Below, piece by piece: positions 43,470-63,998 of a stretch of DNA of 64,000 bases. The stretch covers positions 164,459 through 228,458 of the IMG/VR virus record IMGVR_UViG_3300035698_010479; one strand, written 5' to 3'. The stretch's first letter is position 1. Every line of letters begins with the position of its first letter. The translations under genes and the position numbers were made by a program. A model generated the notes under the pieces. That model saw only the letters and a list, made by a program, of their open reading frames with translations, was not told the DNA's origin and did not search any database.

Positions 43470-46400
43470 TTATTTCTTCCTAGTTAAAACAGCCATAGAT
43501 AAACTAGATGAAACACTATTTATACCTGTAGCAGCTGACCAATTAGAAGTGTTTCTGTTTCTAACTAATCCACCACTACTATGCATCGAGGTTTTTGATG
43601 TTTCGTCTACTATTTCATGGTCTAATGCTTTTACACCGTAACTTGCTAGTATTAAAGCAGAGTATATATCTTTGTTTTGTCCCTTCTTAGGTGTATCAAA
43701 GTGAAGAGATCCACCAGATGTTTGTGTTACAACTATGTTTAAACACTGTTTCTTTAACTCGTTTATTAAATCATACTCGTCTAGTATTAAGTCAGATACT
43801 ATATCTACTGGTACTATTGGAAATTGTAAATGACCATCTTCAAATAAAGATAGTGCTGCAAAGTTAGCGTCAGCTATCCAAGATGTACTAAATGTAATTA
43901 ACTCAAGAATTCTATTACCCTTTAAAGTTAGCGTGTCTTTATCATTTCTATTTAGTATTGGCTCAGCACCATTATAACCCTCTGCTAGTAAGTCTGCAAC
44001 GGATTTACCACCGCCTCCTCTATCCATAAATATACGTAATACATTATAACTACTACAAAGCTCTTGCAGAGACATAGTTATGTCTTGTGTTGTTCTGCCG
44101 TCTAAAGCTAGTACTCTCACTATCTTATTTGGTTTACCTAATTTAATTATTACCACACCACATTTTGCTTTACCACCCTGATTAGGATCTATACCTATTA
44201 TATAAGAAGAGCCTTTATCACCACTTAACTCAATAACATAATCCATTGTAGAGCATTTTTCTAGTATTGATGCTTTAAAGAATCCTTCAGAATCAGATAC
44301 CATGGCCCCTAAATATTCCATAGCAAATTCATGACTAGACATAACCCTTTCAGCGTTCTCGATATTTTTAGGGTCTAAGAAGCCGTCCGGTAGTGCTGTA
44401 TATGGTATTTGAAAAACAGCATGATCTTTAGAACCTTCCTCAATCTGATTCCAATACTCACGCATACGTTTGTACATATGATTAAACTTATAGTAACCAG
44501 AGGAAGTACCAATCATCTTGTTGATGGAGTCTTCTTCAAAATCATCTTCAAAAGCTAACCCTGCCTCTATTAAAGCAGTTCTTCTTTCTAACTCCCTGAC
44601 CTTTTTCATTGGATCTAGTTTAGTGATACTCATAGGAGCTAAAACTGTTTCAATTATCTTAGATGGTACTTGTGCAAACTCATCTACTATAACACAGTAA
44701 AAACGTGAACCACGAATCTTTCCACCATCAGCACCTAGAGGAAGAGCCTCTATAAAAGCACCATTATGGCCATTCACTGCTCTAAACTTTAAGTAGCACG
44801 TGTCCGAGCCTCTAATTGGCCGTTTCTCTGTAGCGGCCTTAAGTATAGGTGCACTGGTATAAAGTTTTTCTATCTCAGCAAATATCATTTTTGATTGCCT
44901 AAATGACGGGCCAATTAGACCCACACGATATCCTGGGTATAATAAGGCTAGTAGAGCAGATAATGTACCTGATAAGAATGTATTATGATTAATAAAACCA
45001 TTTGTCATATAATTAGGCTCAACTTCTGATTCCATATCCATCTCAAAGTCATAACAGTCACCTTTCCAATCTTCTATAGATACAACCGTGTCAAAGTAGT
45101 AATTATATCTTAGTATCTCTTTTAAATTGGTGATAAAATGTGATACCTGTTCTAAACTAAATCCCTTATCTTCTATGCTTGTACATTGCTCTAAAAATTC
45201 ATGCAGTTTAACATAAGTTAATTCTTTTTTATTATTAGTTTCTATATTAAAAGATGGCTTTTTAGATGTTCTGTAAGTAGTTTGATAATAAGTAGTTATA
45301 GCTTTACATACATGTAGTACATAAGGTACTGTATCTTTATTAGGATTTAATACCTTACTTGAAAAATAATTATTTAATATAGTTTGTTTTCTTTTTAATC
45401 TAAAACCTATAAGTTCTTTGAACTTATAGGCATCTTCAGAAAACATGTCTAATAAATAGGCTTTACCAAAATCTGACTTAGTCTTTTTCTCTCTAAGTCT
45501 AGCTATGATACCTAAGTTGAGTAGCATCATTTGAATCTCTTCCAACAATTGTCTAGACACAGAACAACAAGATACACCACCGTTGGTATTATGCACTGTA
45601 CCATCTGTGTCAAAATAACCTTGAAGGAAAGCAATTTGTGACTCTCTTTTAGAAGTACGTATAGAATATGGTACAGTTTTATCATATGCTAAAGTTATAG
45701 GTACTTTATATGTGTTTATAAACTTATTTATACCTTTAGCATAAAATATTACGTCGCATGTACATGACCCAGACTTGTAAGTTATATTATAATTAATATT
45801 ATTAAGTGTGCAAAAAGCAGCAGTAAAAGAAATTAAGTCTTCATCCTCGGAAGTTATAAAGGCACCTGAAATTTTTTTTCCAATATAACCATCCCCTATT
45901 AGTAAACCCAGTAAATACGCGTCATCTATAGGTACTTTATTAACACCAAAAACTTTTTGTCCTCTTTGAATACAGACTTTATCACCAACACTAAATTCGG
46001 CTAGTGTTTTATAAACAAAGTTACCTTCATAATCAATTGTAAGTAAAGGGTGATGATCGCTCCCTCTTTTAATAATACCGTTCTGTGTAATTAACTTCTT
46101 ACCTTGTATACCTTTTTCTAAACATAGTTTTTTAGTATTTCTAAAACCTTCTGATGTAAACATTTTGGTATTATAGTCAATAACTTCATCCTCCCCATCA
46201 GATAAGTATTCTGGTATCTCTGGGAGTACCTCATTTAGATATACAATACCTTTATTAAAATATGTAGTAATTTCACGTAAATATACCGATTTTCCAAAAC
46301 CCCTTGTAGCCACAGAAAGTGTATAAGGTTTGAACCACATAGCTTCAAATACTATACGTTGTACAGGAGCTAGGTCTACTCCTAAAAGTTCATAGGCAGC

Positions 46401-46484
46401 TATACAGGGGTTATTTCTATAAAACTCTATTAGGTCTGGACCTTGTTGTAATACAATATCCATATTTTTGGTTAGCTTAGACAT
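43470..46484 (-). CDS. terL: terminase large subunit containing an intein
   Basis: Walker A ATRGFGK|T split by the intein; GSRFYCVIVDEF Walker B; GIDP and MDRGGGG nuclease motifs; KDIYSAL C-terminal Asp; 568 aa after splicing. Confidence 0.93.
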   Translation of the reverse strand: MSKLTKNMDIVLQQGPDLIEFYRNNPCIAAYELLGVDLAPVQRIVFEAMWFKPYTLSVATRGFGKSVYLREITTYFNKGIVYLNEVLPEIPEYLSDGEDEVIDYNTKMFTSEGFRNTKKLCLEKGIQGKKLITQNGIIKRGSDHHPLLTIDYEGNFVYKTLAEFSVGDKVCIQRGQKVFGVNKVPIDDAYLLGLLIGDGYIGKKISGAFITSEDEDLISFTAAFCTLNNINYNITYKSGSCTCDVIFYAKGINKFINTYKVPITLAYDKTVPYSIRTSKRESQIAFLQGYFDTDGTVHNTNGGVSCCSVSRQLLEEIQMMLLNLGIIARLREKKTKSDFGKAYLLDMFSEDAYKFKELIGFRLKRKQTILNNYFSSKVLNPNKDTVPYVLHVCKAITTYYQTTYRTSKKPSFNIETNNKKELTYVKLHEFLEQCTSIEDKGFSLEQVSHFITNLKEILRYNYYFDTVVSIEDWKGDCYDFEMDMESEVEPNYMTNGFINHNTFLSGTLSALLALLYPGYRVGLIGPSFRQSKMIFAEIEKLYTSAPILKAATEKRPIRGSDTCYLKFRAVNGHNGAFIEALPLGADGGKIRGSRFYCVIVDEFAQVPSKIIETVLAPMSITKLDPMKKVRELERRTALIEAGLAFEDDFEEDSINKMIGTSSGYYKFNHMYKRMREYWNQIEEGSKDHAVFQIPYTALPDGFLDPKNIENAERVMSSHEFAMEYLGAMVSDSEGFFKASILEKCSTMDYVIELSGDKGSSYIIGIDPNQGGKAKCGVVIIKLGKPNKIVRVLALDGRTTQDITMSLQELCSSYNVLRIFMDRGGGGKSVADLLAEGYNGAEPILNRNDKDTLTLKGNRILELITFSTSWIADANFAALSLFEDGHLQFPIVPVDIVSDLILDEYDLINELKKQCLNIVVTQTSGGSLHFDTPKKGQNKDIYSALILASYGVKALDHEIVDETSKTSMHSSGGLVRNRNTSNWSAATGINSVSSSLSMAVLTRKK
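44982..46289 (-). mobile_element. intein with LAGLIDADG homing endonuclease (436 aa, aa66-501 of TerL)
   Basis: Starts SVYL, ends NGFINHN followed by Thr; LAGLIDADG-like LLGLLIGDGY and FLQGYFDTDG. Confidence 0.92.
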
Positions 46485-51868: not shown

Positions 51869-54109
51869 TTATATAGGTACTTGCTGAAACTCTAAATGTC
51901 TTATACTAAACCATCCTTGTGGTGCATGTACTTGTTCAATAACACATACTATATATTGGTAAGCTTCAGTATTATCAAATTGAAATATTTGTGGGTCAGA
52001 AACATCATATAACACATGTTCTCTAACGTTTATAGTAGTTAGTAAGGTTAAATTATCTATATTTGTCCCAGTTAGATTGTTAAAAGCAACTGCTGAGTTA
52101 GTACCATATATCTTTACTACTTTAACACCACTATTAACAGTTGTTCCAATATAGTGACCATTCTCTATATAAACACATCTTGGTATAAAAGGTATTGTAT
52201 AGTCAATATTTATCTTCTGTGGGTATGAACCGTGATTGCCCAAAAATGATTTATATAAAATGTCACCAGTAACGGAAGATAATGGATCAAGTGCGTAAAA
52301 AGCATAGTATGGTGTACTAAAAAAGGTTGTACTTTGTATTTTATTCAAGGAAAATTCCACAGGATACACAGGCGTAAAATTCTTTGGTGGTTCATTTTTA
52401 AATGGATGTGTAATAGGTAAGTCGTCTACCAAACTGTACGTCCATGCTAGGTAACCTTCAGATTTTACTCTGTTATAAGCTGTGTTTCCAGTGCTTAAAA
52501 TTATAAGTTCTTTCAACACACCCTGTAACTGAAATTGTGGATAAGATGAGCTATAATAAAACATATTTAAGGTATTCCAGCCAGCTAAATTTACATTTTC
52601 TAAACATAAAATAAAAAATTTGCCACTATTTAAGTCAGTATATACTTGACCTCTGTTAGCCCACGATACTTTAGAACCATTTAATGTAATATCTGGAGTT
52701 CCAAAATTCTCAGATATAATAGTTTGACTACTACTAATTTCCCCAGCAATACCATACCATGCATTATTATTTGATCCAAAAATAACAAATGTTGGATCTT
52801 CTACCTTCATAACTACATATATACTTTGTAAACCTAAATTATATGGTACTGTTATACTTAGAAGTTTAGTTGAATCTGTATATGATATACCATCGGAATT
52901 TAATACTGGCTGAAATTCTATATTGTTTTGCACAGCATTTCTACCATTGATTGATTTATCTTTCCATGCCGCTACACCGCTAGCAGACTGAGTTATTGTT
53001 GACTCATCTGTAATAGTATACCAACCTTCTGGGCTAATTAAGTCTACTGTCCACTCTATATTAGTAGGAGCTCTTGGAGGTGGTAATACAACAACAGGTA
53101 ATGTACCTGCAGAAATAACTCTATCGTATATTAAAGCATTGAAACCATCTTTAAACGCAGTTATAGTATAGTATGATTTGTTTATTTCGATATTACTAAA
53201 TCTAAAATTACCATCATAATCAGATCTAGTTGTATCTATTAACATACCATTTACGTTATAGTACAGTCTAACAATAACATTAGGCCATACAGTACCACTA
53301 ACAGTAACTTTACCCTCTATATAGCCACCTATGTTGGTATTTATATCACCGTTATTATATACTGTAGATGTTCTTACTCTAGTAGCTTCTGTAGATAAGG
53401 CTTTAAAACTTGGTGGTGTAAGTATATTTATTGGATTATAATAAGAGTTAAATGGAGATATTTTTATGCTTCTTCGCCAAATATTTTTAGTAGCATAAAA
53501 TAGTGATTTATTTTTAAGTTGCCCTGGAAACTTATTTTTAACATATGGCCTGCAAGTTATTTTATCTATCTTACTAACTATATCTATAGAATCTTTAAGC
53601 GTAACAAATTCTATATGTCTTATGCCAAACATTGTTGCTGTTGGATCTTGCACATCCACTATTATTGTAACAGTATATCTAAAACTATATTCTACGTATA
53701 CATAAAAATATTGGTTATCTATAACATCTTCAGCTACGTGTGGTAGCGCCACAAATTCTCCTAGTAATGTCAAATCTGTTAAATCGTAGCCAGAGGTGTT
53801 TAAGAAAGCTGTCGAAGAATTAGTTCCATATACTCTAAATGTTTTTATACCAATATTTGTCAAGCCACCATAATTATGAAAATTATTTAGGCATATTCTT
53901 GACACTACAAATGGTCTACCATGATCTATATTTAGTTTTTGTGGTGGTGTATTATTTAAAGAAGCCCATGAACACCAACTGTACTGATTTATTAAAGATA
54001 GGTCAGGATTTGTAGCAAACCAAGGAGAAGTATCCGTATTATATAATGAGGTAGCTTTTACATACGTAGTGTTATAAAGAGGAGGATAATTGTTTATTGT
54101 GGCAGGCAT
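51869..54109 (-). CDS. mosaic tail fibre/receptor-binding protein
   Basis: 746 aa; ~165-aa beta-sandwich domain duplicated at both termini, central Ig-like (EGKVTV...RLYY...SDYDGNFRF) and lectin-like segments. Confidence 0.65.
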   Translation of the reverse strand: MPATINNYPPLYNTTYVKATSLYNTDTSPWFATNPDLSLINQYSWCSWASLNNTPPQKLNIDHGRPFVVSRICLNNFHNYGGLTNIGIKTFRVYGTNSSTAFLNTSGYDLTDLTLLGEFVALPHVAEDVIDNQYFYVYVEYSFRYTVTIIVDVQDPTATMFGIRHIEFVTLKDSIDIVSKIDKITCRPYVKNKFPGQLKNKSLFYATKNIWRRSIKISPFNSYYNPINILTPPSFKALSTEATRVRTSTVYNNGDINTNIGGYIEGKVTVSGTVWPNVIVRLYYNVNGMLIDTTRSDYDGNFRFSNIEINKSYYTITAFKDGFNALIYDRVISAGTLPVVVLPPPRAPTNIEWTVDLISPEGWYTITDESTITQSASGVAAWKDKSINGRNAVQNNIEFQPVLNSDGISYTDSTKLLSITVPYNLGLQSIYVVMKVEDPTFVIFGSNNNAWYGIAGEISSSQTIISENFGTPDITLNGSKVSWANRGQVYTDLNSGKFFILCLENVNLAGWNTLNMFYYSSSYPQFQLQGVLKELIILSTGNTAYNRVKSEGYLAWTYSLVDDLPITHPFKNEPPKNFTPVYPVEFSLNKIQSTTFFSTPYYAFYALDPLSSVTGDILYKSFLGNHGSYPQKINIDYTIPFIPRCVYIENGHYIGTTVNSGVKVVKIYGTNSAVAFNNLTGTNIDNLTLLTTINVREHVLYDVSDPQIFQFDNTEAYQYIVCVIEQVHAPQGWFSIRHLEFQQVPI

Positions 54110-61157: not shown

Positions 61158-61616
61158 TTACTTGATCACTAAACCAATTCTTGCTTTGGCTGTTGCATTT
61201 ACAATCTCAACTACTTTCCAAGCTACGACTAACTTTTCATCAGGTAGTATACCTTGTACATCTAATTTTTGAGCTATACTAGCTTTTACTACCTCTACCA
61301 AATCATTAAATGATTGTAGTGTTAAAGGATCTAAATTTAACTTAGCTGTTTCAATAGCTAGTGCTGAATCTAAGCTGCTTAATTCAATAATCTCTATAGT
61401 GTTATCATCTCTTAGAGCCAATAAAGCGCTTGTTACTTCAAAAGCCGGAATAACCGTTTTTGGATAAGCCGCCATAGATGCTCCTACAGAAAGCTGGATA
61501 ACTGCGGCCTCCACTGGGTCAATTTTACCATCACCAATAGTTGATGTACCATCAGTAGCACATCCTTGCAGCGCCAAAAATACACACATTACCAACCCAA
61601 TTATGAGTTTTTTCAT
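61158..61616 (-). CDS. lipoprotein
   Basis: MKKLIIGLVMCVFLALQG-C signal II-like N-terminus. Confidence 0.75.
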   Translation of the reverse strand: MKKLIIGLVMCVFLALQGCATDGTSTIGDGKIDPVEAAVIQLSVGASMAAYPKTVIPAFEVTSALLALRDDNTIEIIELSSLDSALAIETAKLNLDPLTLQSFNDLVEVVKASIAQKLDVQGILPDEKLVVAWKVVEIVNATAKARIGLVIK

Positions 61617-61697
61617 ATACTTCTCCTTTTATTTTCTTTTGAAACAGCATTACCACCATGGTATTACTGTTGTATCTCCTCCTATAATTATACGTCA

Positions 61698-61706
61698 GTT
61701 AGTTTA
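61698..61706 (-). promoter_or_regulatory. TAAACTAAC motif (representative copy; see findings)
   Basis: Same 9-mer at 33649, 37740, 43464, 56042 and 57106; here followed by TATAAT and AGGAGG. Confidence 0.5.
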
Positions 61707-62038
61707 TTATACTTTTAAGTTTTGGGCTTTTCGACGGACATTTAGTACTCTTCTCATCACGACCACTAACATTTGTTAACCGGCGCTAGAGGGGATAAAA
61801 CAGTACCACCCTTCCACGTAGCACAAGTACCATAGCTAGGTGTACCAAGTGCACCAATAAGAACGTAGGAAATCATTAAGAGCTGCAGTACTTACCTTAC
61901 TACTACTACTACTACTAACAAACGCTAATAGTACTTTGAAGACAAATACGCTGTTTCAAAAATAACTTCTCTGCTAGTAGTATAGTAGTATAGTAGTATA
62001 TGTATAGAGGGGTAAACATGGTAAGAGATGAGGGTGTG

Positions 62039-62104
62039 GTAGTAATAAATATAGTACTTAAAAGCTATAGTACTTAAAAGCTATAGTACTATATTTATTA
62101 CTAC
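62039..62104. repeat. perfect 20-bp inverted repeat enclosing 16-bp tandem repeats
   Basis: GTAGTAATAAATATAGTACT (62039-62058) / AGTACTATATTTATTACTAC (62085-62104); ATAGTACTTAAAAGCT x2. Confidence 0.88.
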
Positions 62105-62174
62105 TATAAGTTGGTGGTTGCTAATAATTGTACAATAAGTAAATAGGGCTGTCTCGTATAGTAAGAACAATTTT

Positions 62175-62993
62175 TTATAATGTTATAATCATGCGTATTT
62201 CTACGGGTGGTACAACACTAGCGTCTGGTGGTATTACTTCATCTAATGTGAATATATAATTAGGTGATTTAGGGCTTTCAGTATCGTCTATATAAACGGC
62301 CGCCATAGTAAAATTAGTAGTATTATGTGTCAGTACAATACCATCACACTCCATCGACGATGTAGGTACCAAATTGATTGAAATTTCATGAGGATATGCT
62401 TTAGCAGTTGGACTCCATTGAGTATGCCATAAAGTTTCTGGTATACCATCAAAGGCATTAGAAGCCTTGCCATCCTCTTTTGCTGTTTCTTCACTATCAA
62501 CAAAAGTAATACTCCATGGGACATCTGGTAGTTTAGTACCTGCAGCATCTGTAGTTTCATACAACACTTTTAATTCGGCCAAGCTTGTCCATGCCCCGCC
62601 GTTTATTTCACTAAGAGCAACGAGTCTCAAAAATTTACCAATTACTGGTGTGAATAAAACCTCTTTTTCAGTCATAGCTTTATCAAATGCCCCTTTAGCT
62701 ACCGGAATTCCCCAATTTACTCCATCGATACTAGTGTATATTTCATAATTTGCAATAGTTCCGTTGACTCCTCCATCTTGTCTGGGTAAATATTTGATAC
62801 CTCTTATCTTTGTGATGTCGTTACTTATAGAGTTACACACAGGAAGTCCCTCTTGGTATAGTCTATAACTCTTAACAGTTCTACCTGTTGCAGACACAGC
62901 TGAGAAGTCCACCTGAAGGGTTTTTATAGCGGCAGCTGTTGCAAAAGAACCCAAACTTACTAGCACTAACAATAACATAATAATTCGTTTCAT
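62175..62993 (-). CDS. exported protein with a circularly permuted F5/8 type C (discoidin) domain
   Basis: Signal peptide; YLPRQDG..NG.I..YEIY.S.DG.NW...AEL precedes W.I..VDSEE..EDG.ASNAFDG...T.WHT.W...PHEI. Confidence 0.78.
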   Translation of the reverse strand: MKRIIMLLLVLVSLGSFATAAAIKTLQVDFSAVSATGRTVKSYRLYQEGLPVCNSISNDITKIRGIKYLPRQDGGVNGTIANYEIYTSIDGVNWGIPVAKGAFDKAMTEKEVLFTPVIGKFLRLVALSEINGGAWTSLAELKVLYETTDAAGTKLPDVPWSITFVDSEETAKEDGKASNAFDGIPETLWHTQWSPTAKAYPHEISINLVPTSSMECDGIVLTHNTTNFTMAAVYIDDTESPKSPNYIFTLDEVIPPDASVVPPVEIRMIITL

Positions 62994-63277
62994 ATGGCCC
63001 CCAAATAAATTTTTATCTTACAATAATAAAGTTAAATAAAGGTGGTGGTCGAGTTGCTTAAAATACTAGAAATTTATATTTATAGGCACCCTTATAGTGA
63101 TACAGCCTTATTAGGGATTCTTTCGTTTTTATAGGGGGAGTTCTTTGTTTGGAAGAGTTATAGTGGTACTCTTTCTTTGAGAGTAATTAAGCTCATTTTG
63201 CAGTTTTTAACTAAACTGCTTTAAATATTTTTATTTCTGGGGTATTTGACCCCCTCCCCCCCCCTAAGGAGCCTCCC

Positions 63278-63532
63278 ATGTCTGAAATCATCCTTGTTGC
63301 ATCAAAAAAGAACATTTTCATGTCTTCTGACAAAACTGTCGTTGCAGACCTGTCGGTCTACGATGATGCAATGCTTCTTACTACCAAAAAAGGTAAATAC
63401 GTCCTTAAACAGGATGGTATTGCTGAATTTCCATCTTATTCCACCTTTTACAGCGGTGGTGTAGACATCAGTGGCCGTCTTTATGAGGTACAGGTGGAAG
63501 TTATGAAGCGTACCGCGGTACTGTCTTGGTAG
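63278..63532 (+). CDS. small hypothetical protein, probable early gene
   Basis: 84 aa, AAGGAG RBS, own terminator. Confidence 0.75.
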   Translation: MSEIILVASKKNIFMSSDKTVVADLSVYDDAMLLTTKKGKYVLKQDGIAEFPSYSTFYSGGVDISGRLYEVQVEVMKRTAVLSW

Positions 63533-63573: not shown

Positions 63574-63637
63574 GAAGGAGCTAACATATCGTTGGCTCTA
63601 AAAAACCAAAGCAGCCAAGGCTGCAAAGGAGTTCGCC

Positions 63638-63955
63638 ATGACTTACTCAAAAGATTTCGGAACCCTGAACCTCATCGGTTGTTACTTAGTTAACGGTGAT
63701 CCTGTTCAGGCCAAGACACAAGAGGTATCCAAGATTACCCACTTCGTGGATAATGTTGATGAGCCCAAGGTGTCTATAGACCTTACCAAGCGCTACCTTT
63801 TGGTTTCGCCTAACGGTAAGTCGATGCCTACCTCTATTGGTATACAAACCAAGAAAGGCACGAAGTATACCTATAACCAGAATGGTTACTTCATCGAGGC
63901 TCAGCTCAAGAAAATGGTAGGTACTATGACCTACACCAGGGGTGTTACCAAGTAA
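63638..63955 (+). CDS. small hypothetical protein, probable early gene
   Basis: 105 aa, AAGGAG RBS, own terminator. Confidence 0.78.
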   Translation: MTYSKDFGTLNLIGCYLVNGDPVQAKTQEVSKITHFVDNVDEPKVSIDLTKRYLLVSPNGKSMPTSIGIQTKKGTKYTYNQNGYFIEAQLKKMVGTMTYTRGVTK

Positions 63956-63960
63956 CCCTT

Positions 63961-63998
63961 ACTGTACCGCTGCCTTCGGGTAGTGGTACAGTTTTTTT
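63961..63998 (+). terminator. intrinsic terminator with cUUCGg tetraloop
   Basis: ACTGTACCGCTGCC-TTCG-GGTAGTGGTACAGT-TTTTTT. Confidence 0.92.

What the first reader, a model, noticed from the sequence alone, without database searches (positions are those of the whole stretch)
62175..62993. Circularly permuted discoidin (F5/8C) domain inserted in an Fn3-like exported protein
Seen: the canonical second half of the F5/8C domain (IRGIKYLPRQDG...LRLVALSEING..WTSLAEL) comes first, joined by YETTDAAGTKLPDVP to the canonical first half (WSITFVDSEE...NAFDG...WHTQW...PHEISINL). The whole unit sits between SYRLY..G.PVC and MEC....NFTMAAV..DDTES.KS, which read as the two halves of an Fn3-like domain. Established: F5/8C termini are adjacent, so permutation is structurally feasible. 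Inference: an unusual domain-insertion event that produced a phage-encoded exported lectin.
Basis: partly seen in the sequence, partly recalled or inferred. Interest (0 to 1): 0.6.

Follow-up and report, generated by a model that had tools for sequence, protein, structure and literature searches.

The report
Circularly permuted discoidin lectin, phage-encoded
A large salt-lake phage encodes an exported sugar-binding protein whose discoidin (F5/8C, CBM32) domain has its two halves in swapped order, evidently cut out of register from a tandem-repeat ancestor; it is a clean example of protein topology evolution, but not the first permuted discoidin domain.

Summary
ORF 62175-62993 (-) encodes a 272-aa protein with a signal peptide. 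Residues 63-145 match the second half of the F5/8C profile and residues 160-214 match the first half. The nearest relatives (45-63% identity) are secreted proteins with two tandem canonical F5/8C domains. Residues 63-214 align colinearly with exactly one repeat period taken out of register, and the linker is the former inter-repeat linker. AlphaFold2 folds the core alone as one compact domain (pLDDT 92.8, pTM 0.88). Contigs from independent salt-lake runs bridge every junction, so it is not an assembly chimera.

First, a differently cut natural permutant of this domain already exists at the C-terminus of Bacteroidales GH35 beta-galactosidases, including the solved BT0290 structure (6EON). The core model superposes on it across the old-termini junction (Z 11.7, 1.9 A, 108 residues). 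Second, the Fn3 reading of the flanks is only weakly supported (profile P 0.02 and 0.19, in register; AF2 pLDDT below 50). The rival reading, decayed outer half-domains, has no sequence support.

Verdict: a real, probably functional permuted lectin domain. It is a new variant of a known kind, of moderate interest.

The parts
62175..62993 (-). Whole gene: 272-aa exported protein (P0001) plus stop codon
   Evidence: An identical protein is encoded on an independent ENA contig.
62928..62993 (-). Signal peptide, about residues 1-22 (basic n-region KR, hydrophobic core, small residues A-A-A before the likely cleavage site)
   Evidence: Read from the sequence. No signal-peptide predictor was available.
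62808..62927 (-). N flank, residues 23-62. It has no detectable relatives, contains an SYRLYQEG motif (Fn3 C-strand-like) and Cys53.
   Evidence: Searches find no family. hhalign to the Fn3 family A3 gives P 0.19, in register. AF2 pLDDT is below 60.
62559..62807 (-). Canonical C-terminal half of F5/8C (strands b4-b8), residues 63-145, placed first
   Evidence: PF00754 profile positions 44-127. 63% identity to P0002. AF2 pLDDT 92-98. Aligns to sialidase CBM32 chain 518-597.
62517..62558 (-). Linker, residues 146-159. It joins the old C-terminus to the old N-terminus and is homologous to the inter-repeat linker of the tandem relatives (shared DVPWS).
   Evidence: pLDDT 89-91 in the core model. 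Bridged by contigs of runs X1 and X2.
62352..62516 (-). Canonical N-terminal half of F5/8C (strands b1-b3; DSEE, WHTQW and PHEI motifs), residues 160-214, placed second
   Evidence: PF00754 profile positions 8-66. Own HMM positions 2-58. Aligns to sialidase CBM32 chain 459-516. pLDDT 91-97.
62178..62351 (-). C flank, residues 215-272. It contains Cys216 and an NFTMAAVYIDDTESPKS motif resembling Fn3 F-G strands. No relatives were found.
   Evidence: Searches find no relatives. hhalign to the Fn3 family gives P 0.02, in register. Smith-Waterman against P0118 gives p 0.013. AF2 pLDDT is below 50.
63023..63052 (-). Promoter-like site about 30 nt upstream of the start codon. The gene is the first of a leftward unit and diverges from the plus-strand ORFs at 63278 onward.
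   Evidence: consensus match only, 9 of 12; ORF layout.

Best explanation
The gene encodes a Sec-exported carbohydrate-binding protein of a roughly 230-kb salt-lake phage. Its single F5/8C (discoidin, CBM32) domain is a natural circular permutant. The chain runs b4-b8, then a 14-residue linker, then b1-b3. The new termini lie in the b3-b4 loop, one residue apart in the canonical fold. The unit is exactly one repeat period taken out of register from a tandem F5/8C array, and the former inter-repeat linker now closes the old termini (permutation by duplication followed by loss of the outer halves). The two halves pack intramolecularly into a normal beta-sandwich. This rebuilds a sugar site that needs residues from both halves: W193 from the second-placed half and R71 from the first-placed half. 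The roughly 40-aa and 58-aa flanks are not recognisable F5/8C sequence. Most likely they form a small Fn3-like beta-sandwich, with the lectin domain protruding from its C-C' loop. The only two cysteines, C53 and C216, sit at the base of the insert and could clamp it with a disulfide after export. Shown: the permutation, its tandem-array origin, the reality of the sequence, and the confident single-domain prediction. Inferred: sugar binding, the Fn3 nature of the flanks, the disulfide, and the role. My best guess for the role is binding a glycan of the infected cell's envelope, for example receptor masking or superinfection exclusion; I give that about 0.3.
For: Order of the halves. Colinear 63% alignment of residues 63-214 with P0002 105-255, where the tandem period is 150 residues. 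All 150 best hits among 1.84 billion representatives match only within residues 58-214, and they are multi-repeat F5/8C proteins. The invariant family residues are kept in both halves. The AF2 core model has mean pLDDT 92.8 and pTM 0.88, with all five models at 88.6 or above. The model superposes across the b8-linker-b1 junction on the experimental structure 6EON (Z 11.7, rmsd 1.9 A, 108 residues). The two halves given as separate chains score ipSAE 0.59 against a best control of 0.00. The tool's verdict was 'weak support'; its mark was reached by 51 of 78 solved complexes and 2 of 108 mismatched pairs. The three runs agree in at least 91% of their contacts and the partner pLDDT is at least 67. 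Junctions are bridged with no mismatches by contigs of three independent runs, and an independent ENA contig carries the same gene. GC3 of the core is 0.237 against a phage mean of 0.230, so the segment has long been resident. The sialidase CBM32 galactose contacts are Trp542, Arg572 and Glu578 (PMC10167667); by the alignment they map to W193, R71 and G78. For the flanks. The nearest homologue's gene sits directly upstream of a 118-aa signal-peptide-plus-Fn3 gene, and this gene pair recurs. Two members of that Fn3 family carry an 11-residue insertion in the same loop.
Against: No experiment of any kind exists. The full-length AF2 model is poor (mean pLDDT 61, flanks below 50), so how the flanks sit is unknown. 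The Fn3 similarity is weak (P 0.02 and 0.19; empirical p 0.02-0.05), and Pfam fn3 matches nothing in the phage. Glu578 of the galactose site is Gly here and throughout this subfamily, so the ligand is unknown. No orthologue with the same architecture was found, so conservation of the whole arrangement cannot be tested. The MSA rows for the core come from tandem arrays, where these two halves belong to different domains. The split-chain test passed only weakly, and a solved relative exists, so that pass may reflect the model's memory of the fold.
Confidence: 0.6

Rival explanations
1. Decaying tandem protein. P0001 is a signal peptide-D1-linker-D2 protein like its 320-340-aa relatives. The outer halves (N-half of D1, C-half of D2) have shrunk and diverged beyond recognition. 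They are either relics left after the inner halves took over as a permuted domain, or they still complete two degenerate sandwiches.
For: The overall layout is colinear with the signal peptide-D1-linker-D2 relatives. The global MAFFT alignment shows scattered matches: PVC against PxC before b3, L.E[VI], and EI..I. Predicted strand and helix spacing in the N flank loosely parallels a true N-half. The ESM-feature search with the C flank lists F5/8C clusters first, at score 0.86, which is lead level only.
Against: The flanks score like their own shuffles against HMMs of the canonical halves (539 and 548 of 1000 shuffles reach the real score). hhalign against the F5/8C profile gives P 0.49 and 0.16, and both alignments are out of register. 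The flanks are 13 and 26 residues too short. Identity falls from about 63% to noise at the same structural loop on both sides, which looks like breakpoints rather than graded decay.
Confidence: 0.2
2. Intermolecular complementation. The C-half of one chain pairs with the N-half of another, giving a domain-swapped dimer or oligomer instead of an intramolecular permuted domain.
For: The split halves are predicted to associate as separate chains. That result is equally compatible with association in trans.
Against: The 14-residue linker is modelled confidently as closing the domain in cis (pLDDT 89-91, pTM 0.88). The same b8-linker-b1 connection exists in cis in the solved 6EON domain.
Confidence: 0.08
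3. Non-functional debris. This would be a fragment of a tandem F5/8C gene captured by the phage, whose half-domains neither fold together nor bind anything.
For: It is a singleton with no orthologues. It lies in an accessory region of small unknown ORFs near the end of the record.
Against: The frame is intact, with a signal peptide and a start context. It spans exactly one full period with no strand missing or duplicated. All family-invariant residues are kept in both halves despite full amelioration of GC3 to the phage value. The single-domain model is confident.
Confidence: 0.07
4. Assembly chimera or misjoin within a repeat.
For: The source is a metagenomic record, the gene lies 1 kb from the record's end, and depth in the public runs is low.
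Against: Junction 1 (62807/62808) is bridged by X3 record 18. Junction 2 (62351/62352) is bridged by X1 record 5 and X2 record 11. The linker is bridged by X1 record 6 and X2 record 12. All have zero mismatches. An independently assembled 4845-bp ENA contig carries the identical gene and runs about 2.9 kb past the record's end.
Confidence: 0.02

Closest known systems
Canonical F5/8C / CBM32 domains, e.g. the galactose-binding module of Micromonospora viridifaciens sialidase (1EUT, 2BZD) and domain 1 of galactose oxidase
   Same: Same family by sequence (E 1.4e-29; 37-43% identity over the alignable half). Same predicted sandwich: 84-91 residues superpose at 1.3-2.0 A. The Trp542 and Arg572 equivalents are kept.
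   Different: Strand order is b4-b8 then b1-b3, so sequential aligners superpose only one half. The Glu578 equivalent is Gly. The domain is embedded between unrelated flanks.
Secreted tandem F5/8C proteins (P0002, P0004-P0024 and many multi-repeat arrays), some in exosortase-type polysaccharide loci
   Same: Closest sequence relatives (45-63% identity). Residues 63-214 are colinear with C-half of D1, the linker, and N-half of D2. The linker motif is shared. They also carry a signal peptide.
   Different: They contain complete canonical domains. P0001 keeps only one out-of-register period and has unrelated flanks.
C-terminal domain of Bacteroidales and Verrucomicrobiota GH35 beta-galactosidases, including BT0290 (PDB 6EON)
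   Same: It is a natural circular permutant of the same domain, with b8 joined to b1 by a short linker. It aligns colinearly with P0001 over b6-b8, the linker and b1-b3 (34% identity, E 1e-18). It superposes on the core model at Z 11.7 and 1.9 A. It is widespread in the ESM Atlas.
   Different: The cut site is between b5 and b6 (PF00754 position about 72) rather than between b3 and b4 (position about 44). It is appended to an enzyme rather than nested between flanks, and it is bacterial rather than phage. I found no paper in the held library that calls it a permutation.
Textbook permutation-by-duplication cases and beta-sandwich permutants (C2 domain topologies I and II, concanavalin A versus favin, DNA methyltransferases); own knowledge
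   Same: The same evolutionary logic applies: tandem copies followed by loss of the outer parts. Here the extant tandem relatives and the retained linker make the route visible.
   Different: Different folds and families.
Small secreted Fn3 proteins (116-129 aa: P0118, P0267-P0272) encoded next to lectin-domain genes
   Same: Signal peptide plus about 90 aa, close to P0001 minus its core (120 aa). There are in-register weak matches at the C strand and the F-G strands. A natural 11-residue insertion occurs in the same loop.
   Different: The similarity is not statistically secure, and Pfam fn3 does not detect the flanks.

Membership tests
F5/8 type C / discoidin / CBM32 (PF00754) | Significant match to the family profile above the curated cut-off | tested here: met
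   69.2 bits against a cut-off of 28.2, E 4.8e-19.
F5/8 type C / discoidin / CBM32 (PF00754) | All parts of the domain present exactly once | tested here: met
   The two pieces tile the model once: positions 55-140 and 2-58 of 141. In Pfam the pieces cover 44-127 and 8-66.
F5/8 type C / discoidin / CBM32 (PF00754) | Canonical N-to-C order of the strands | tested here: not met
   The C-half comes first. The cut lies between canonical residues 516 and 518 of the sialidase module.
F5/8 type C / discoidin / CBM32 (PF00754) | Compact distorted beta-sandwich fold | tested here: met
   This rests on prediction only. The AF2 core has pLDDT 92.8 and pTM 0.88. It superposes on CBM32 structures and on 6EON.
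F5/8 type C / discoidin / CBM32 (PF00754) | Ligand-contact residues of the galactose-binding type (Trp542, Arg572, Glu578 of MvCBM32) | tested here: inconclusive
   W193 and R71 are kept. The Glu578 position is G78, as in the whole subfamily.
F5/8 type C / discoidin / CBM32 (PF00754) | Carbohydrate binding | not testable with these tools
   Needs a glycan array, ITC, or pull-down on host envelope.
Circular permutant arisen by tandem duplication | Extant relatives with tandem copies, and a permutant colinear with the junction of two copies | tested here: met
   P0001 63-214 aligns with P0002 105-255, and the period is 150 residues.
Circular permutant arisen by tandem duplication | The linker closing the old termini is homologous to the inter-copy linker | tested here: met
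   The alignment runs through the linker and shares the DVPWS motif.
GH35-type permuted F5/8C (6EON C-terminal domain) | Same cut site (between b5 and b6) and attachment to a GH35 catalytic domain | tested here: not met
   The GH35 order is C-half(33-83), N-half, C-half(1-27). P0001 is cut at profile position about 44 and has no GH35 domain.
Fibronectin type III (PF00041), for the two flanks taken together | Match to the family profile | tested here: not met
   Pfam finds nothing in either flank alone, and there is no fn3 hit anywhere in the phage. The joined flanks could not be sent to Pfam because that needs a typed construct.
Fibronectin type III (PF00041), for the two flanks taken together | Profile similarity to bona fide Fn3 proteins, in register | tested here: inconclusive
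   hhalign gives P 0.02 (C flank, F-G strands) and 0.19 (N flank, C strand). Joined flanks against the A3 HMM give empirical p 0.02-0.05.
Fibronectin type III (PF00041), for the two flanks taken together | Seven-stranded beta-sandwich | tested here: inconclusive
   AF2 predicts strands in the flanks, but at pLDDT below 50.
Sec-exported protein | Cleavable N-terminal signal peptide | not testable with these tools
   Read by eye from residues 1-22. No predictor was available.

The most novel reading that the evidence does not exclude
P0001 is a two-step natural topology rearrangement. One out-of-register period of a tandem CBM32 array, i.e. a complete circular permutant with adjacent termini, was grafted into the C-C' loop of a small secreted Fn3 protein and is clamped there by a C53-C216 disulfide. 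The two parents are a conserved neighbouring gene pair in bacterial exosortase-type polysaccharide loci. The phage would then carry a fusion of that pair, which it uses to bind its host's surface polysaccharide.
Probability: 0.3. Interest if true: 0.55.

Novelty: new variant of a known kind. Interest (0 to 1): 0.42.

Why it matters
This is a clear natural case of permutation by duplication. The tandem progenitor family is still extant at up to 63% identity. The permutant is exactly one repeat period, and the old inter-repeat linker is retained as the closure. Together with the GH35/6EON domain, it shows that the discoidin/CBM32 sandwich tolerates at least two different cut sites. That is useful for engineering lectin or CBM insertions and biosensors. 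It also warns annotators that split or partial PF00754 hits can be complete domains. If the flanks do form a host domain, this would be a compact natural template for a domain nested in a loop. For phage biology, it adds an exported lectin to the accessory genes of an uncultured jumbo phage.

Tried and rejected
- **Decayed outer halves.** I tested whether the flanks are decayed outer half-domains. HMMs of the canonical halves with 1000 shuffles gave no signal. hhalign gave P 0.49 and 0.16, both out of register. I kept this only as a 0.2 rival.
- **Relatives of the flanks.** A word search on residues 215-272 found only the protein itself. phmmer of both flanks against PDB sequences gave nothing or chance hits. 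Pfam on each flank gave nothing. The ESM Atlas search with the C flank scored 0.86, which is lead level and may be coloured by the context of the whole protein.
- **Orthologues in phages.** The search for related loci in viral contigs found none. INPHARED tblastn gave three partial hits at 35-38% identity, to the domain only.
- **Other proteins with C-half before N-half.** Among the 273 proteins collected, the apparent cases (P0256, P0197, P0246 and others) are gene fragments or frameshifted products.
- **Full-length AF2.** The model was too poor in the flanks to decide their fold. Foldseek on it recovered only one half of the domain.
- **Complex prediction on the two halves.** ipSAE was 0.59 with a best control of 0.00, and the tool's verdict was 'weak support'. 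I use it only as minor support.
- **Foreign composition of the core.** None was found.
- **Literature.** There were no hits for a permuted discoidin or CBM32 domain, and the BT0290 paper is not held.
- Sending the re-ordered domain or the joined flanks to Pfam or AF2 would need typed constructs. I did the equivalent only inside scripts with HMMs of my own.

Full report
**What is there.** The window is the last 64 kb of a 228,458-bp IMG/VR virus record with about 34% GC and an estimated completeness of 86%. It is a phage. It has terminase, major head, tail-assembly and PhoH matches and a tape-measure match. Its terminase is at most 27% identical to those of Bacillus and Psychrobacillus phages. 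It is the first gene of a leftward unit. A promoter-like site lies about 30 nt upstream. A lipoprotein-like gene lies 558 bp downstream.

**The sequence is real.** Logan contigs from four salt-lake metagenome runs lie on the region; those of X1-X3 listed over the gene have no mismatches, X6 shows a T>C at 62729. Junction 1 (nt 62807/62808, residues 62/63) is bridged by X3 record 18. Junction 2 (62351/62352, residues 214/215) is bridged by X1 record 5 and X2 record 11. The internal linker is bridged by X1 record 6 and X2 record 12. An independently assembled ENA contig of 4845 bp encodes the identical protein and extends about 2.9 kb beyond the record's end. An assembly chimera is therefore very unlikely.

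**The domain is circularly permuted.**
- Pfam PF00754 matches at 69.2 bits in two stretches: residues 60-141 on profile 44-127, and residues 171-231 on profile 8-66.
- An HMM built from 46 canonical domains of the closest relatives gives two partial hits on the native protein (model 55-140, then model 2-58). It gives one end-to-end hit of 191.8 bits once the halves are re-ordered.
- Against the solved galactose-binding module of the M. viridifaciens sialidase, the query's second-placed half aligns to chain 459-516 and its first-placed half to 518-597.
- The cut therefore lies in one loop (b3-b4). The new N- and C-termini are one residue apart in the canonical fold.

**Origin.**
- The best relatives (P0002 at 63%, others at 45-54%) are 310-342-aa secreted proteins with two tandem canonical domains.
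- P0001 residues 63-214 align colinearly with P0002 105-255. That span is the C-half of domain 1, the inter-domain linker, and the N-half of domain 2.
- The tandem period is 150 residues. The core is therefore exactly one period out of register, with no strand missing or duplicated. The 14-residue closure is the old inter-repeat linker (shared DVPWS).
- A phmmer search of 1.84 billion representatives found 4059 relatives. In all 150 best hits the match lies within residues 58-214, and none shares the flanks.
- GC3 of the core (0.237) equals the phage mean (0.230), so the segment is not a recent import.
- All family-invariant residues are retained in both halves.
- This is the classic signature of permutation by duplication and loss of the outer parts (own knowledge of that model).

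**Does it fold as one domain?**
- The full-length AF2 model, made with a shallow MSA, was mediocre: pLDDT 61 and pTM 0.56, with the flanks below 50.
- The core alone (residues 58-218, 86-row MSA) gave mean pLDDT 92.8 and pTM 0.88. All five models scored 88.6 or above, and the linker scored 89-91.
- Canonical CBM32 structures superpose on only one half (84-91 residues at 1.3-2.0 A), as expected for sequential aligners.
- The top VIA-align hit, 6EON, superposes 108 residues at 1.9 A (Z 11.7) across b6-b8, the linker and b1-b3.
- As separate chains the two halves scored ipSAE 0.59, against 0.00 for the best of three controls. The tool's verdict was 'weak support'; its mark was reached by 51 of 78 solved complexes and 2 of 108 mismatched pairs. 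The runs agree in at least 91% of contacts, and the partner pLDDT is at least 67. I count this as minor support only.

- I followed up 6EON (BT0290, a GH35 beta-galactosidase). Bacteroidales GH35 genes (L088, translated as P0273; also L093 and L087) end with C-half(33-83), then the N-half, then C-half(1-27).
- The P0273 tail is orthologous to 6EON 595-779 right up to the C-terminus (212 bits).
- Pfam sees only a truncated PF00754 hit there, positions 7-72 of 127.
- The tail aligns colinearly with the P0001 core at 34% identity.
- ESM Atlas clusters of GH35 enzymes from Bacteroidota and Verrucomicrobiota give the same partial superposition.
- A natural permutant of this domain, cut between b5 and b6, is therefore widespread and already solved. 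P0001 is an independent permutant with a different cut, between b3 and b4.
- I found no paper in the held library describing either as a permutation. The BT0290 paper is not held.

**The flanks.** I tested two readings.
- *Relics of the outer half-domains.* The flanks score like their own shuffles against half-domain HMMs. hhalign to the F5/8C profile is non-significant and out of register. Only anecdotal matches appear in a forced global alignment, plus a lead-level ESM feature hit.
- *Two halves of an Fn3-like domain.* The gene of P0002 is followed by a 118-aa gene for a signal peptide plus Fn3 (P0118). This pairing of a lectin-domain gene with a small Fn3 gene recurs in exosortase-type polysaccharide loci.
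  - hhalign of that Fn3 family against the C flank gives P 0.02 on the F-G strands. Against the N flank it gives P 0.19 on the C strand. Both alignments are in register.
  - Joined flanks give empirical p 0.02-0.05, and Smith-Waterman gives p 0.013.
  - P0001 minus its core is 120 aa, against 116-129 aa for the family. Two family members carry an 11-residue insertion in the same C-C' loop.
  - The protein's only two cysteines, C53 and C216, flank the insert.
- I favour the Fn3-like reading at about 0.45-0.5 and give the relic reading about 0.2. Neither is shown.

**Function.** In the sialidase module, galactose is contacted by Trp542, Arg572 and Glu578 (PMC10167667). By the alignment these positions are W193 (second-placed half), R71 (first-placed half) and G78. 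The site thus needs both halves. Its specificity may differ from galactose, because the Glu is Gly throughout this subfamily. A signal peptide is not expected on a virion protein (own knowledge). The gene lies in an accessory region next to a lipoprotein-like gene. I therefore propose an exported envelope-glycan-binding protein, perhaps for receptor masking or superinfection exclusion. That role is inference, at about 0.3.

**Verdict.** This is a new variant of a known kind: a second cut site for a permuted discoidin/CBM32 domain, in a phage, possibly nested in another domain. Interest is moderate.

Noticed in passing
window 7311-29732 (-): A single open frame of 7473 aa. Its only Pfam hit is the tape-measure family PF10145, near residue 3500-3700 (E 3e-25). 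If it is one tape-measure protein, it would be extraordinarily long and would imply a tail of about a micrometre by the usual rule of about 1.5 A per residue (own knowledge).
   Followed up: partly
window 43470-46484 (-): The 1004-aa terminase ORF has an N-terminal 500 aa resembling 'intein-containing DNA helicase' genes of Bacillus phages, plus an endonuclease PHROG. The terminase part proper is at residues 500-950. This may be an intein or a fused nuclease.
   Followed up: no
window 51869-54109 (-): A 746-aa protein with weak virion-structural and CarboxypepD_reg matches. It has a sub-threshold F5/8C-like N-terminus (residues 27-100; E 0.002-0.05). This may be a second, divergent discoidin-like module in the same phage.
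   Followed up: partly
window 61158-61616 (-): A 152-aa ORF with a lipoprotein-type signal (a lipobox-like ...LQGC). It matches no family in Pfam or PHROGs. It is the next gene downstream of the lectin gene, which suggests a small cluster of envelope-targeted accessory genes.
   Followed up: no
window 61617-62174: A 558-bp intergenic stretch with direct repeats (a duplicated unit of about 19 nt beginning AGTACTATAGC), an (AGT)n run, and TACTA-rich repeats. Public-run contigs have no coverage at 61808-62009.
   Followed up: no
window 63605-63978: Contigs of runs X1 and X2 join 63605 to 63978, skipping 372 nt. The skipped part contains the 105-aa ORF 63638-63955. This looks like a deletion or insertion polymorphism in the phage population, but only 23 nt lie on the shorter side. 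There is also a 1-nt length variant at 63256, in a G/C run, in X3.
   Followed up: no
L088:1387-3738 (P0273), L093, L087; PDB 6EON: GH35 beta-galactosidases end in a circularly permuted F5/8C domain (b6-b8, linker, b1-b3, b4-b5). Pfam reports it only as a truncated PF00754 hit, positions 7-72.
   Followed up: yes
L006 8001-9602; L115 1445-4357; L114 2331-4351: A conserved bacterial gene pair: a secreted PKD/F5/8C (or lectin-like) protein followed by a 116-118-aa signal-peptide-plus-Fn3 protein and then a 380-410-aa unknown. It sits in loci with PEP-CTERM/exosortase-domain and glycosyltransferase genes.
   Followed up: partly
ESM Atlas, row 1: A cluster of 97 hypothetical 152-aa proteins (Bacteroidota, no Pfam family) matches the core model over residues 16-157 (TM 0.69/0.73, 129 aligned). 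This may be another family with a permuted order. No sequence id was returned, so it could not be checked.
   Followed up: no
L002 (ENA contig, 4845 bp): This contig extends about 2.9 kb beyond the end of the IMG/VR record. It carries ten more small ORFs (59-107 aa, no Pfam hits) on the strand opposite to the lectin gene. The virus record is therefore truncated here.
   Followed up: no
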